This document shows positions 8,254 through 62,137 of a DNA stretch of 64,000 bases, piece by piece; the stretch's first letter is position 1, and each line of letters opens with the position of its first letter. The DNA lies in IMG/VR virus record IMGVR_UViG_3300028045_000001, positions 1 to 64,000 of that record. One strand, 5' to 3'. The position numbers and the translations under genes were made by a program. The notes below the pieces were generated by a model. The model saw only the letters and a list, made by a program, of their open reading frames with translations, ran no database searches and had not been told where the DNA came from.

Positions 8254-10379
8254 TCTCGGACCTTTCACATAGAATGGAATTAAATGAGGAGTATATGAAA
8301 AATCAAGAAACAGTAGTGATACCAACTTACGATAGCCAAATTTTATTGCAAACTGACATGGATGCATATAAGTTAGGATGCAAATGGGCAGTGTTAATAA
8401 TCAATAGTAGCTGCGAACTAAAGTTTGAAAACGAGATAAACCGTTCCGAAGCAGACGATCTCATATCCAATACAAAAAATATTATGCTACAAATACAAAC
8501 GACAATAGATAGTTTAGGTATACAAAAAACGATTGTACAAGACAACTCACTAATGGATGAACCAGGTATCATACGCGTAGCTCTCATAGATAAAGAAGAA
8601 GGCATCGTGGACGGAGATATCCCATTATGTATAGCGATATGCTCAGATGAAGATTTAATTGAAGCAGCCGGAATGTGGCTCACTATTGTGTATCGGTTAA
8701 AGATAGGGTGTGAGATTGATTACACTAAATCCGAAAAAGAACGACTCCCACATTTTGAATACCTTGCCACAGTACGACCTGCCAATGCGACAGACAAGGA
8801 AGATTCGACAATGCCAAGTACTTATATTCTCATCGCCCATGCTGTTGCGACTGCCCCTCGGAGTGAAGAGGAACTACGTAAGCATAAAGGTTCGTTTATA
8901 ACAAAGTGGCAAGGACAAAAGATTACCTTACCGTTAGATAAATCCGGAACATATGACTTCGAAATCCATTGGGGCGACGGTGCACACGATAAAGTCATAG
9001 GGTACGATCATAGTAGAATCTCACACACATATGCCGATGGCGAGGAGGTGCATACCATAACCATTTATGGGACTGTAGAAGGATTCGGGTTTGATTATTC
9101 ACCGGGGGCAGGCGTAGCGGATATACTCGATGTACTTCAGTGGGGAGATGTCAAGTTACATAACAACGGAGCTCAGTTTGCACATTGTACAAAGTTAAAG
9201 GGATTCAGTGCTAAGGATGTTCCGGATTTATCTGATGTTACCAATATGTGCGGTATGTTCGGTAAGGCTATTTCTTTCAACCAAGATATATCTAAATGGG
9301 ATGTAAGCAGTGTTACTAATATGGAGCAGATGTTCTGTTACGCCATAGTCTTCAATCAAAACATCTCCAATTGGGATGTGAGTAATGTTACTACTATGGC
9401 TGGCATGTTTAGAGGTGCCGCATCATTCAACCAAGATATATCCAAATGGGATGTAAGCGGTGTTACTAATATGAGGGATATGTTCCATGAGGATACTTCT
9501 TTCAATCAAGCCTTATCTAACTGGGATGTTAGTAGTGTTACCAATATGAACCGCATGTTTTATATGGCTACCTGTTTCAATCAGGAGATCTCTAAGTGGG
9601 ATGTTGGAAATGTTACCGATATGGATGGCATGTTCATGTATGCTGTATCCTTCAACCAAGATATCTCCAACTGGGATGTGAGTAGTGTTACTGGTATGGG
9701 TGCGATGTTCCAGCGAGCTTCATCCTTCGATCAAGACATATCCAAATGGGATGTTAGTAATGTTACCGATATGATGGACATGTTCCGTTGCGCCATAGTC
9801 TTTAACCAAGACATATCCAAATGGGATGTTAGTAGCGTAACTGATATGCAGGATATGTTCCATGCAGCTACATCCTTTAACCAGGATATCTCTAAGTGGG
9901 ATGTAAGCAGCGTAACTGATATGGAGGATATGTTCCATTCAGCTCCATACTTCAATCAGGATGTATCTAACTGGGACGTTAGTAGTGTTACTAATATGAA
10001 CGGCATGTTCCATGAAGCTAAGGCTTTCGATCAAGATATCTCCAAATGGAATGTCGGCAGTGTAACTGATATGCACGGGATGTTCCGAGGGGCTCTTTCC
10101 TTCGATCAAGCTATCTCTAACTGGGATGTGAGTAATGTTACCAACATGAGCGGGATGTTCTATAATGCTGTTCGTTTCGACAAATGTATATATAGCTGGG
10201 ATGTAAGCAAGGTCACTAATATGAGGTGTATGTTCTATGGGGCTACCTGTTTCAACCAGGATATTTCTGAGTGGGACGTGAGTAACGTCACTAATGTACA
10301 AAGCATAGTCGGGCTTGCTCCAAGTTTTAAGCGAAATCTCCCCAATTTTAAAGATTGCGCCAATGTGATAGTTAGATAA
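8250..10379 (+). CDS. BspA/DUF285 leucine-rich-repeat protein with PKD-like domain
   Basis: FITKW...IHWGDG domain followed by 14 full 25-aa repeats of consensus FNQDISxWDVSxVTxMxxMFxxAxS. Confidence 0.9.
9274..10323 (+). repeat. 75-bp coding tandem repeat (DUF285 units)
   Basis: Recurring ttcaa(c/t)caagatat(a/c)tc..a.tgggatgt at 75-nt period; boundaries approximate. Confidence 0.8.
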
Positions 10380-14743: not shown

Positions 14744-14781
14744 TATACAGGTACTGGGCGATATCGCCCAGTACCTGTATA
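14744..14781 (+). terminator. 38-bp perfect palindrome
   Basis: tatacaggtactgggcgat|atcgcccagtacctgtata. Confidence 0.7.
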
Positions 14782-14841
14782 CAAATAAACATTATTTTTT
14801 TACCATGTACTGATGTGCCGTCTTTCAATAAACCTTGGTTA

Positions 14842-51981: not shown

Positions 51982-52031
51982 AGTGACGGGGATAGTATGG
52001 GCTATGATAAGCCCATACTATCCCCGTCACT
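51982..52031 (+). terminator. 22-bp-stem hairpin
   Basis: agtgacggggatagtatgggct/agcccatactatccccgtcact, then T9. Confidence 0.75.
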
Positions 52032-52072
52032 CAGAGATTATTTTTTTTTATATCTCAGTATGTTTTTATCTA

Positions 52073-54205: not shown

Positions 54206-54213
54206 TATATTAC
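54206..54213 (+). promoter_or_regulatory. early promoter motif TATATTAC
   Basis: Exact motif after T-run. Confidence 0.6.
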
Positions 54214-55281: not shown

Positions 55282-55581
55282 CTAAGTAAACCGTATAAGA
55301 TTCTTCACCGATCTTTTTTTTACTGCAACTATACCATCGTCGGTCTTGTAATGTACCCATGAAAATGTGACATTGTGAACAGATGCGTTGGTTACAACGT
55401 GTCCGTTAGGAAAAACTATTTTTTTATATTTTTTTTGGTCACTGAATCTATAGTGCGAATTGAATACGTCACATATGCCGATATATACATTTGCAAAGAT
55501 GTCCAATACAATAGGAATAAGAAATGTTGTAACGATTGCAGTCATACTAAGAATTGTTATAATGTTGATGTGTTCACTCAT
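55282..55581 (-). CDS. small membrane-anchored protein
   Basis: N-terminal TM segment and short soluble tail. Confidence 0.55.
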   Translation of the reverse strand: MSEHINIITILSMTAIVTTFLIPIVLDIFANVYIGICDVFNSHYRFSDQKKYKKIVFPNGHVVTNASVHNVTFSWVHYKTDDGIVAVKKRSVKNLIRFT

Positions 55582-55656
55582 GTTATCAACCCCATAATTA
55601 AATTAATGTTATATAACCACCCATTTAAATTATGTTACTACGAAAAGGTAATTGGA

Positions 55657-55692
55657 AAAGTACTCTCGGCCGTAATTGGCCGAGAGTACTTT
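55657..55692. terminator. intergenic hairpin
   Basis: 15-bp stem aaagtactctcggcc/ggccgagagtacttt. Confidence 0.6.
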
Positions 55693-55778
55693 CGCATAAT
55701 ACACGCACTAACCAATCAAAAGGAATCTATGACATAAAATGAATGTGGCATGCACCCATTGGATATCTTTCGTTATAA

Positions 55779-56011
55779 TTGCAGGGCCTGTCCAACATAG
55801 CCAACACCTGGAGTAGTATATGCTCCGGCTGTAGCGCCGGCAGGTTCGCACTACAACAACTGAGTACCCCTCTCAGCCATACGGGACCCTCATGATGGGT
55901 TGCATCGAGCGGGTCCGTTCAGGTGGATGTGGCTGCATCATGACATATTAGAGGTACATGGTTGTGCTCGTCATGGGTGTGTGGCGGTCAGTTGGACACC
56001 AGGCCCTGCAA
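55779..56011 (+). ncRNA. candidate structured ncRNA (about 233 nt)
   Basis: Ends pair (ttgcagggcctg/caggccctgcaa, tccaac/gttgga); several internal stems; GC-richer than flanks; no ORF of 60 aa or more; G-U pairs favour the + strand. Confidence 0.55.
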
Positions 56012-56063
56012 ATCGTAAAAGACATTAATATTTATTCACTACATATAATAGTTAAACAATGTG

Positions 56064-56088
56064 TATATATATATATATATATATATAT
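56064..56088. repeat. (TA)12T microsatellite
   Basis: 25-nt alternating TA run followed by gttac. Confidence 0.9.
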
Positions 56089-56125
56089 GTTACTTCTACA
56101 TATAATTTTACACTGCCTATATTTT

Positions 56126-56590
56126 TTATAGGCACCTATTATACGCTGCTGTACATAAACTATCTACTACTATGTTGCCTCGATTGCTGGCATGTCCTTG
56201 TACCCACACCATACGTAGACTGTGTGGGGCGATAACGTCTAAGAACATCGTCCAAAGATCTATATTCTTAGCGAGCCTTCCAGAGGAAGTCACCCACCCA
56301 TTACCCGACCAATTATATACCCAGCCCTTATTATAACTATCCACAACATACCTACTATCACTGTACACTGTAACCCTACAAGGAACAGTCAGGGCCCGTA
56401 TAGCATTTATAACCCCGCTAAGTTCCATACGATTGCTGGTAGTGTCCTCGACGGCTTCGCACATAATCATGTACCTATTGTCATCGCTTATAAGCAAGGC
56501 AGCGTTAGTGCCGTACTCTTTACTACCCCCACCATCGGTATATATGCTGACATCTTGTGTTTTGTCCATACGAATCAATTTCCTATACAT
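56126..56590 (-). CDS. rnhA: ribonuclease HI
   Basis: IYTDGG, TSNRMELSGVI, YSDSRYV, KNIDLW, WVQGH..NRGN..VD.L. Confidence 0.92.
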   Translation of the reverse strand: MYRKLIRMDKTQDVSIYTDGGGSKEYGTNAALLISDDNRYMIMCEAVEDTTSNRMELSGVINAIRALTVPCRVTVYSDSRYVVDSYNKGWVYNWSGNGWVTSSGRLAKNIDLWTMFLDVIAPHSLRMVWVQGHASNRGNIVVDSLCTAAYNRCL

Positions 56591-57495: not shown

Positions 57496-57503
57496 TATAT
57501 TAC
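57496..57503 (+). promoter_or_regulatory. early promoter motif TATATTAC
   Basis: Exact motif after T-run. Confidence 0.6.
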
Positions 57504-57509
57504 TATAAT

Positions 57510-57712
57510 AAGAACGGAAATGGTGCTGTTCTTTTTTTCACCATAGGGGGGAGTAACGCCGACGTGTTACTGCACGAATGCGCGCTCCTGAATCGAGTGC
57601 GAATCAACTAACCCACAAGTTGCTGAGTATAGCTCGTAGGCCCGGTCCACTATAACGTAAATGTGGATCGGGTCGATTCAGCGGTGCTGCGGGGGAGTAT
57701 TGTTTTTTTTTT
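57510..57712 (+). ncRNA. candidate structured ncRNA or leader upstream of the RNAP-subunit operon
   Basis: Stems agtaacg/tgttact, cgcgctc/gagtgcg, gctgagt/attcagc and a 12-bp ggcccggtccac/gtggatcgggtc; ends in T-run. Confidence 0.45.
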
Positions 57713-57757
57713 CGTGTCCCTGGCCGCACAAGTTAACAATTCTTATAGGAGAGCGAG

Positions 57758-62057: not shown

Positions 62058-62080
62058 ATGTTGTGCTATTAAACTTACCT

Positions 62081-62114
62081 ACTGACACGAGTCTCATATG
62101 AGACTCGTGTCAGT
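62081..62114 (+). terminator. 34-bp perfect palindrome
   Basis: actgacacgagtctcat|atgagactcgtgtcagt. Confidence 0.7.
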
Positions 62115-62137
62115 GCAGGTCATCATCATTTCATTTA

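What the first reader, a model, noticed from the sequence alone, without database searches (positions are those of the whole stretch)
55779..56011. Candidate 230-nt multi-branched ncRNA next to RNase H
Seen: a 12-bp terminal helix (55779-55790 with 56000-56011) continued by tccaac/gttgga and gccaacacc/ggtgt(g)tggc. It encloses hairpins ggagta/tgctcc, ctgag/ctcag, acgg(g)accc/gggtccgt with inner gatg/catc, and catgac/gtcatg with inner gaggtaca/tgtgctc. The segment is GC-richer than its flanks, has no ORF, and a TATAAT lies immediately upstream. I cannot match it to tRNA, tmRNA, SRP, RNase P or a known ribozyme core. Inference: an undescribed phage structural or decoy RNA.
Basis: partly seen in the sequence, partly recalled or inferred. 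Interest (0 to 1): 0.65.

Follow-up and report, generated by a model that had tools for sequence, protein, structure and literature searches.

The report
Orphan GC-rich inverted-repeat RNA candidate
A marine phiKZ-like jumbo phage carries, just behind its RNase H gene, a single-copy 233-base GC-rich segment closed by a long interrupted inverted repeat; it looks like a structured RNA sitting where related phages keep tRNA genes, but it has no relatives and no transcript data, so its function is unproven.

Summary
What exceeds chance is narrower than claimed.

**Beyond chance**
- A roughly 36-bp interrupted closing stem, -50.9 kcal/mol against -20.8 ± 3.7 for shuffled arms.
- A GC island of 56% in a 39% GC genome. 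It is the only non-coding one in 240 kb.

**Not beyond chance**
- The inner hairpins. The 167-nt core folds no better than shuffles (z -0.6 and -1.4).
- The upstream TATAAT, which is not a credible promoter.

**Searches**
- No match in Rfam, tRNA or tmRNA searches.
- The genome has no reverse transcriptase, Ro60, RtcB or RNase III.
- No homologue in cultured phages, 16 related IMG/VR genomes, JGI metagenomes or bacterial genomes.
- All environmental copies are identical, so covariation cannot be tested. No RNA-seq run holds the phage.

**Context**
- The element lies between the RNase H stop codon and a strong hairpin terminator.
- Two distant relatives carry tRNA genes in this position.

**Reading**
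- My best reading (confidence about 0.35) is a minus-strand RNA domain co-transcribed with RNase H. Its long duplex would act as a processing or stability stalk.
- Rivals are a plus-strand small RNA, a relic of an insertion bounded by inverted repeats, an attenuator leader, and a DNA-level site.
- Interest is modest. The candidate is plausible but orphan.

The parts
55779..56011 (.). The strand is unresolved: context favours minus, and the number of G-U pairs weakly favours plus.
   Evidence: GC is 0.562. MFE is -104.1 kcal/mol (plus) and -96.4 kcal/mol (minus). It is single copy in the 239,960-bp genome.
55779..55808 (.). Left arm of the closing stem: 12 bp, then 6-7 bp, then 9 bp, interrupted by a bulge and internal loops.
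   Evidence: Pairing probabilities are 0.87-0.99 on both strands.
55976..56011 (.). Right arm of the closing stem.
55763..55771 (-). Outer extension of the stem. On the minus strand GAAAGAUAU pairs with AUGUCUUUU (56017-56025). Two of the nine pairs are G-U on the minus strand and A·C mismatches on the plus strand.
   Evidence: (minus-strand fold of the whole spacer) and direct reading.
56017..56025 (-). Partner of the outer stem extension.
55809..55975 (.). The 167-nt GC-rich core with local hairpins. Its folding is not better than shuffles.
   Evidence: z -0.57 and -1.44.
55862..55879 (-). Core segment UGGCUGAGAGGGGUACUC, complementary to the 5' arm of the downstream terminator. It is a possible antiterminator or mimic of the terminator arm. 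Weak lead only.
   Evidence: -17.3 kcal/mol, reached by 0.4% of shuffles of the whole upstream region; 2.8% with the stricter null, one of four tests.
55657..55692 (-). Strong 15-bp hairpin, followed by UUUU on the minus strand. It is the likely end of the RNase H/element transcript and could also stop plus-strand read-through.
   Evidence: The phage's other terminators are similar long perfect hairpins.
56064..56089 (.). (TA)13 microsatellite between RNase H and the element. Its length varies between environmental copies.
56126..56590 (-). RNase H gene (Pfam RNase_H, E 1e-29). The element lies 115 nt downstream of its stop codon.
55282..55581 (-). 99-aa predicted membrane protein, the next minus-strand gene after the terminator.
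   Evidence: No Pfam or PHROG match.
55774..55779 (+). Not supported as a promoter.

Best explanation
**What is real.** The non-chance feature is a long interrupted inverted repeat of about 36 pairs, with arms at 55763-55808 and 55976-56025. It closes off a 167-nt GC-rich core in an otherwise AT-rich spacer.

**Most likely reading.** The element is read as RNA on the minus strand, as part of the RNase H transcript. The order is RNase H ORF, (TA)13, element, 85 nt, strong hairpin terminator.

**Proposed mechanism.** The long irregular duplex would act as a processing and stability stalk, the kind of substrate that host RNase III cuts. Cleavage would either release a stable structured RNA of about 230 nt or set the 3' end and half-life of the RNase H message.

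**Parallel in relatives.** Two distant relatives carry tRNA genes in this same slot. Those tRNAs would likewise be cut out of a longer transcript.

**Shown:** the repeat, the GC island, the absence of an ORF, the single copy, the terminator, and the shared gene order with tRNA-bearing relatives.

**Inferred:** transcription, the strand, RNase III processing, and any downstream function.
For: - The closing stem is far beyond chance, and the whole element folds better than all shuffles.
- It is the only non-coding GC island in 240 kb. GC enrichment in an AT-rich genome is the classic mark of structured RNA genes.
- The stem continues outward with two transitions that are G-U on the minus strand and A·C on the plus strand. 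There is no sharp repeat end.
- A 10-bp inner helix with two G-U pairs also forms only on the minus strand.
- The whole spacer folds with z -7.1 on the minus strand against -5.2 on the plus strand.
- The element lies between the RNase H stop codon and a strong hairpin followed by U4 on the minus strand.
- The RNase H to RNAP-beta gene order is kept in four distinct related loci: L016, L019, L020 (L021 is an identical sequence from a second record) and L022.
- In L019, four tRNA genes lie between RNase H and a hairpin. In L016, a tRNA-Gln is followed by a 17-bp hairpin.
- In L019's genome, most detected tRNAs sit at this locus.
- The window's own genome has no tRNA gene at all.
Against: - No transcript data exist. 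Only DNA metagenomes hold the phage.
- No homologue was found, so there is no covariation. All copies are identical.
- The core is not thermodynamically exceptional.
- The plus-strand fold is 7.7 kcal/mol more stable and has 6 G-U pairs against 2.
- No minus-strand promoter was identified, and the phage's own promoter motifs are absent on both sides.
- The phage encodes no RNase III, so processing would depend on an unknown host.
- Spacers next to RNase H in relatives generally fold with z of -2 to -7. Hairpin-rich spacers are common in these phages.
Confidence: 0.35

Rival explanations
1. The element is a stand-alone, trans-acting, plus-strand small RNA (structural, scaffold or decoy) transcribed from the TATAAT just upstream.
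For: - The plus-strand MFE is lower (-104.1 against -96.4 kcal/mol) and has 6 G-U pairs against 2.
- A 13-bp helix with three G-U pairs forms only on the plus strand.
- 191 of 226 predicted genes are on the plus strand.
Against: - TATAAT has no -35 partner.
- GTTATAAT occurs at chance frequency and mostly inside genes.
- By the usual sigma-70 spacing (my knowledge), a start would fall inside the 5' arm of the closing helix.
- The phage's own promoter motifs, TATATATTAC and TCTTTCAAT-N8-GTTATATATAACT, are absent here.
- No terminator follows on the plus strand.
- The z-score is better on the minus strand, and shuffled plus-strand sequences fold more stably than shuffled minus-strand ones, so composition explains the lower plus-strand MFE.
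Confidence: 0.12
2. The element is a DNA-level relic: a small insertion bounded by terminal inverted repeats (MITE-like), or a piece of foreign GC-rich DNA, with no RNA function.
For: - Significance lies in the terminal inverted repeat, not in the core.
- Its GC content is foreign to the genome.
- A possible 3-bp AAT duplication appears if the repeat is read as 11 bp (direct reading).
- It is absent from all relatives.
Against: - It is single copy in the genome.
All hits were single and pattern-length only.
- No copy exists elsewhere in JGI metagenomes, IMG/VR or cultured phages.
- No transposase or reverse transcriptase was seen in the genes near the element, and a whole-genome search found no reverse transcriptase.
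- The repeat carries on past its supposed end with G-U-compatible transitions.
- The AAT duplication is weak, about a 1 in 64 chance for each boundary choice.
Confidence: 0.2
3. The element is a cis-acting leader or attenuator on the minus strand. It would control read-through of the hairpin at 55657-55692 into the 99-aa gene through an alternative pairing between the core and the terminator.
For: - The layout of structured domain, 85-nt spacer, terminator and gene resembles a riboswitch leader.
- Core segment 55862-55879 pairs with the terminator's 5' arm at -17.3 kcal/mol.
Against: - With a strict null the complementarity reaches only p = 0.028 in one of four tests.
- The switching segment lies about 170 nt from the terminator, inside a hairpin.
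- The 99-aa gene has its own promoter-like GGTTATATAACA between the terminator and its ATG.
- No riboswitch family matches.
Confidence: 0.1
4. The element is a functional DNA site, such as a replication origin, cruciform or protein-binding palindrome, next to an AT-rich (TA)13 unwinding region and close to replication genes.
For: - A GC-rich palindrome sits beside a 29% GC stretch containing (TA)13.
- RNase H and a DNA polymerase gene are nearby.
Against: - Cumulative GC and AT skew rise steadily, with no turning point near 56 kb.
- The repeat is imperfect, with bulges and G-U-type mismatches that suit RNA better than a cruciform.
- No iterons were noticed when reading the spacer.
Confidence: 0.08

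Closest known systems
Phage T4 'species 1' and 'species 2' stable RNAs (RNA C and RNA D) in the T4 tRNA gene cluster (from my own knowledge, not tested here)
   Same: They are small stable RNAs of unknown function, encoded by a large lytic phage in its tRNA gene locus and cut out of a longer transcript. Here the element occupies the slot that holds tRNA genes in relatives.
   Different: The T4 RNAs are shorter and have tRNA-like ends processed by RNase P. This element has no tRNA-like feature, and its expression is unknown.
RNase III processing stalks: rRNA operon flanking stems, T7 early mRNA sites and the lambda sib retroregulator (established knowledge)
   Same: In both, a long irregular duplex forms from sequences flanking an RNA domain or lying downstream of a gene. 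Here about 36 pairs carry bulges and internal loops.
   Different: Cleavage is untested, the phage has no RNase III of its own, and the host is unknown.
Candidate structured ncRNAs found as long GC-rich intergenic regions in AT-rich genomes (PMC6429828, PMC8723152)
   Same: The detection signature is the same: an intergenic region well above the genome in GC, with no ORF.
   Different: Those candidates are accepted on covariation across homologues. None exists here.
Bacterial Y RNAs, YrlA (PMC4201824)
   Same: The 5' and 3' ends pair into a long bulged stem that closes a branched domain.
   Different: There is no tRNA-like module and no Rfam match. The phage has no Ro60/TROVE or RtcB gene.
Retron msr-msd RNA
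   Same: It has a 12-bp terminal inverted repeat (a1/a2-like) around hairpins, and it lies next to an RNase H gene.
   Different: No reverse transcriptase exists anywhere in the complete genome. The helix continues instead of ending at a branching G.
MITE-like repeat elements (Correia, ERIC and similar)
   Same: The size is similar and the element has imperfect terminal inverted repeats.
   Different: It is single copy, has no clear target duplication, and no other copy appears in any collection searched.

Membership tests
Any Rfam 15 family | A covariance-model score at or above the family's gathering threshold. | tested here: not met
   One search found no match in the whole window. One search (E-value mode, 55500-56300) gave only chance-level hits, none covering the element.
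tRNA / tmRNA / intron-containing tRNA | A cloverleaf with T and D arms, or a tmRNA tag and tRNA-like domain. | tested here: not met
   ARAGORN, including the intron option and relaxed thresholds, found 0 genes in the region and in the whole genome.
Retron msr-msd | An adjacent or genomic retron-type reverse transcriptase. | tested here: not met
   PF00078 is absent from the complete 239,960-bp genome.
Retron msr-msd | a1/a2 terminal inverted repeats ending at an unpaired branching G. | tested here: inconclusive
   A 12-bp inverted repeat is present, but the helix continues for 16 more pairs.
Bacterial Y RNA (YrlA) | A partner Ro60 (TROVE) gene and a tRNA-like module. | tested here: not met
   Searches found no TROVE and no RtcB. 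There is no T-arm and no Rfam match.
MITE / element bounded by terminal inverted repeats | Multiple copies sharing the terminal repeats, each flanked by target-site duplications. | tested here: not met
   It is single copy. The bacterial-genome scan gave only single chance hits, though it was truncated at 120 rows. Only a doubtful 3-bp AAT duplication is present.
Structured ncRNA accepted by covariation | Compensatory base changes in helices across homologues. | not testable with these tools
   All copies are identical. The nearest relatives are only 31-37% identical in RNAP beta and lack the element.
RNase III processing stalk | Staggered cleavage by RNase III within a duplex of about 20 bp or more. 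| not testable with these tools
   The duplex is present. Cleavage needs an experiment.
Expressed small RNA | A discrete transcript with defined ends. | not testable with these tools
   no RNA run holds the phage; only DNA contigs.
Riboswitch / attenuator leader | Mutually exclusive terminator and antiterminator pairing next to a conserved aptamer. | tested here: inconclusive
   The complementarity is -17.3 kcal/mol, but p = 0.028 in one of four tests. No aptamer family matches.

The most novel reading that the evidence does not exclude
The element would be a new class of jumbo-phage structured RNA that has taken over the tRNA gene slot behind RNase H. It would be excised from the RNase H transcript through its long stalk and would act in trans, for example as a protein-binding scaffold or decoy, in a nucleus-forming phage lineage that has no tRNA genes. 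Unrelated, single-copy domains closed by stalks next to RNase H in two relatives (L020 5147-5402, L016 6002-6306) could be fast-evolving counterparts.
Probability: 0.15. Interest if true: 0.6.

Novelty: new member of a known kind. Interest (0 to 1): 0.35.

Why it matters
Non-coding RNAs of nucleus-forming jumbo phages are little characterised, and their RNA must leave a protein-bounded compartment. A stable RNA co-transcribed with a replication gene in the tRNA slot would be a useful handle on RNA processing in such phages. As it stands, the element is one orphan sequence from an uncultured marine phage. It is a reasonable entry for a candidate list, but not a discovery. The practical lesson is that the fold statistics here come from the closing repeat and the GC content, not from the branched interior.

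Tried and rejected
**RNA family searches**
- Rfam at gathering scores on the whole window, and in E-value mode on the locus: nothing.
- ARAGORN with intron and relaxed options: nothing.

**Similarity searches**
- blastn against 50,697 phage records, at E 1e-5 for the locus and E 10 for the element: only 22-36-nt chance hits.
- Exact-pattern scans of IMG/VR: none.
- Exact-pattern scan of JGI metagenomes: only the phage's own contig.
- Scan of bacterial genomes for the repeat arm: single chance hits only, no paired arms. That scan was truncated.

**Covariance model**
- A covariance model built from the single sequence found nothing in 16 related IMG/VR genomes.
- It also found nothing in 20 loci, apart from trivial hairpins that matched the terminal helix with the interior deleted.

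**Looking for closer relatives**
- The best RNase H homologues are 47% identical and bacterial, from sulfatase and DUF1501 neighbourhoods.
- The best RNAP-beta homologues are 37% identical.
- Cultured phages carry only scattered RNase H relatives of 33-42% identity.

**Sequencing reads**
- Only five seawater DNA runs hold the phage. All are identical and none is RNA.

**Partner genes in the phage genome**
- Reverse transcriptase, Ro60, RtcB and RNase III are all absent.

**Promoters**
- The phiKZ-like early motif and a second bipartite motif were found genome-wide, but not at the element.
- GTTATAAT was rejected as a promoter.

**Other ideas tested**
- Origin of replication: no skew signal.
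- Decayed tRNA array: no residual tRNA score.
- Structured spacers of L020 and L016 as homologues: no sequence similarity to each other or to the element, and each is single copy.
- Pairing of the flanks of the L019 tRNA cluster: the duplex prediction was not interpretable.

**Not run**
- I did not run the exhaustive protein search on the short stop-to-stop frames, because they look non-coding.

Full report
**Setting.** The window is the first 64 kb of a complete 239,960-bp virus genome with direct terminal repeats, assembled from seawater metagenomes. It is 39% GC. It encodes a split multisubunit RNA polymerase beta subunit, about 32% identical to that of phiKZ-like Pseudomonas phages, and a divergent family B DNA polymerase. 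This makes it a distant phiKZ-like (chimallivirus-like) jumbo phage. Its nearest relatives in 5.8 billion proteins and in IMG/VR are only 31-37% identical in RNAP beta.

**The observation.**
- The whole 233-nt element folds to -104.1 kcal/mol on the plus strand (z -3.5) and -96.4 kcal/mol on the minus strand (z -4.15). None of 200 dinucleotide shuffles did as well on either strand.
- In a scan of 4135 genome windows of 233 nt, corrected for GC, it ranks 8th on the plus strand and 14th on the minus strand.
- I inspected six of the other most stable windows. Each owes its score to one long perfect hairpin of 15-22 bp, most of them lying just upstream of an early promoter. These are the phage's terminators. 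The element is the only multi-helix case among those inspected.
- Its GC content (0.562) is third of 4134 windows. The other windows at 0.55 or more lie in two Gly/Ala/Pro-rich coding regions. The element is therefore the only non-coding GC island in the genome.
- There is no credible ORF.

**What is and is not beyond chance.**
- Folding the inner 167 nt alone (55809-55975) gives z -0.57 on the plus strand and -1.44 on the minus strand. Of 200 shuffles, 59 and 19 fold as well. The inner hairpins are what any sequence of this composition produces.
- The signal is in the closing stem. Arms 55760-55810 and 55976-56030 pair at -50.9 kcal/mol, against -20.8 ± 3.7 for shuffled arms, with 0 of 300 as good.
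- A perfect 12-bp inverted repeat at this spacing is not rare by itself. The genome has about 14 of them. This one is the GC-richest and extends to about 36 pairs.
- The absence of a z-score signal in the core does not exclude function, because the score normalises away the GC enrichment that is itself the signal. It does mean that the branched anatomy is unproven.

**Promoter and strand.**
- The TATAAT at 55774-55779 has no -35 partner.
- GTTATAAT occurs 24 times in the genome against 23 expected, mostly inside genes.
- By the usual sigma-70 spacing (my knowledge), a start would fall within the 5' arm of the helix.
- The phage's own promoters are different. One is a phiKZ-like early motif, TCAgTA...TTTTTTATTTATATATTAC, at about 35 well-placed sites, nearly all on the plus strand. 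The nearest are at 54206 and 57496. The other is a bipartite motif, TCTTTCAAT-N8-GTTATATATAACT. Neither occurs at the element on either strand.
- For the plus strand: a lower MFE, 6 G-U pairs against 2, and one helix specific to that strand.
- For the minus strand: a better z-score, a 10-bp helix with two G-U pairs, and a 9-bp outer extension of the stem (55763-55771 with 56017-56025). Two pairs of that extension are G-U on the minus strand and A·C on the plus strand. The whole spacer gives z -7.1 on the minus strand against -5.2 on the plus strand.
- Thermodynamics does not decide the strand.

**Context.** The element lies in a small minus-strand island within a genome where 191 of 226 predicted genes are on the plus strand. 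The order on the minus strand is as follows:

| Feature | Coordinates |
|---|---|
| RNase H gene | 56590-56126 |
| (TA)13 | 56089-56064 |
| Element | 56011-55779 |
| Spacer | 85 nt |
| 15-bp GC-rich hairpin followed by UUUU | 55692-55657 |
| 99-aa membrane protein gene | 55581-55282 |

- The same arrangement of RNase H on the minus strand with RNAP beta downstream is kept in four distinct related loci: L016, L019, L020 (L021 is an identical sequence from a second record) and L022.
- In L019, four tRNA genes (Ala, Asn, Asp, Ser) lie on the RNase H strand between the RNase H stop codon and a hairpin, and a fifth (Thr) lies just upstream.
- In L016, a tRNA-Gln downstream of RNase H is followed 25 nt later by a perfect 17-bp hairpin.
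- Most of the tRNAs detected in L019's genome are at this locus.
- The window's own genome has no tRNA gene at all.
- The element therefore sits in the position that relatives use for small stable RNA genes co-oriented with RNase H and ended by a hairpin. This is the main reason I favour the minus strand.

**Search for relatives.**
- The element is single copy in its genome.
- Contigs of the same phage from several ENA, JGI and Logan samples are identical across the element. They differ only in (TA)n length and at two G-U-compatible positions in a hairpin over the RNase H stop codon. No covariation can be read from them.
- No similarity was found in cultured phages, in IMG/VR or in JGI metagenomes beyond the phage's own contig.
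- A scan of bacterial genomes for the repeat arm returned only single chance matches and no paired arms.
- A covariance model of the element found nothing in 16 related virus genomes. It also found nothing in their loci, apart from trivial hairpins.
- No RNA-seq run holds the phage.

**Known families considered.**

| Family | Result |
|---|---|
| Retron | No reverse transcriptase in the genome |
| Y RNA | No Ro60 or RtcB, and no tRNA-like module |
| tRNA or tmRNA | None found |
| MITE | Single copy, no clear target duplication, and the repeat continues past its supposed end |
| Replication origin | No skew signal |
| Riboswitch-like attenuator | A core segment (55862-55879) pairs with the terminator's 5' arm at -17.3 kcal/mol, but under a strict null this is p = 0.028 in one of four tests |

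**Conclusion.** The element is a real, non-random, single-copy, GC-rich segment closed by an inverted repeat, and it belongs to no described family.
- My best reading (confidence about 0.35) is an RNA domain on the RNase H strand. Its long irregular duplex would serve as a processing or stability stalk, by analogy with RNase III sites and with the tRNAs that relatives place here.
- The decisive data are strand-specific transcript ends, RNase III cleavage and closer relatives. None is obtainable with the present collections.

Noticed in passing
window 4668, 10447, 21553, 52073, 54206, 57496, 62138 (+), and about 28 more sites in the rest of the genome: There is a strongly conserved phiKZ-like early-promoter motif, TCAgTA...TTTTTTATTTATATATTACtataATGA. 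It is almost always on the plus strand and mostly 45-130 nt upstream of a start codon.
   Followed up: partly
window 14058, 14844, 15794, 51520 (+); genome 123420: A second bipartite promoter-like motif, TCTTTCAAT-N8-GGTTATATATAACT, lies upstream of genes that lack the early motif.
   Followed up: partly
window about 14745-14785, about 51985-52035, about 62075-62115; genome about 103190, 152140, 185500: Very long perfect hairpins (15-22 bp), often without a U-run and mostly just upstream of an early promoter. They appear to be the phage's terminator type.
   Followed up: partly
window 56064-56089: The (TA)13 microsatellite varies in length between environmental copies of the same phage by roughly one to three repeat units (the L006 copy is also interrupted). 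Short-read assemblies break here.
   Followed up: partly
window 56113-56135 (variant positions 56115 and 56132): A hairpin lies over the RNase H stop codon. In contig L006 two C-to-T changes on the minus strand both turn G-C pairs into G-U pairs. One of them is a synonymous Cys codon change.
   Followed up: partly
whole genome (G000): The complete 240-kb genome has no tRNA or tmRNA gene, whereas related IMG/VR genomes have 1-6.
   Followed up: yes
L020:5147-5402 and L016:6002-6306 (minus strand): Spacers upstream of RNase H in two relatives fold into 250-330-nt domains closed by imperfect long-range helices of about 40 bp (z -5.8 and -6.25). Each is single copy and has no sequence similarity to the other or to the element.
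   Followed up: partly
window 57505-57757: An unusually long (about 250 nt), GC-rich (up to 0.56) leader lies between the early promoter at 57496 and the 365-aa gene. It folds only modestly better than shuffles, z -2.4.
   Followed up: partly
window 8936-8952 and 9217-9233: A perfect 17-bp inverted repeat with about 265 nt between its arms lies inside a predicted coding region. It is the longest such pair in the genome.
   Followed up: no
window 55556, 55772 (+), 56337, 56778 (-): Four copies of GTTATAAT fall within 1.3 kb around the element, although the motif is at chance frequency genome-wide.
   Followed up: partly
window 56126-56590: The closest homologues of the phage RNase H (45-47% identity) are bacterial genes in sulfatase and DUF1501 neighbourhoods, not phage genes. 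This could be a hint about the host or the gene's donor.
   Followed up: partly
L030:8649-8936: The RNAP-beta homologue of this relative has an in-frame insertion of about 96 aa between residues matching 320 and 323 of the window's protein.
   Followed up: no
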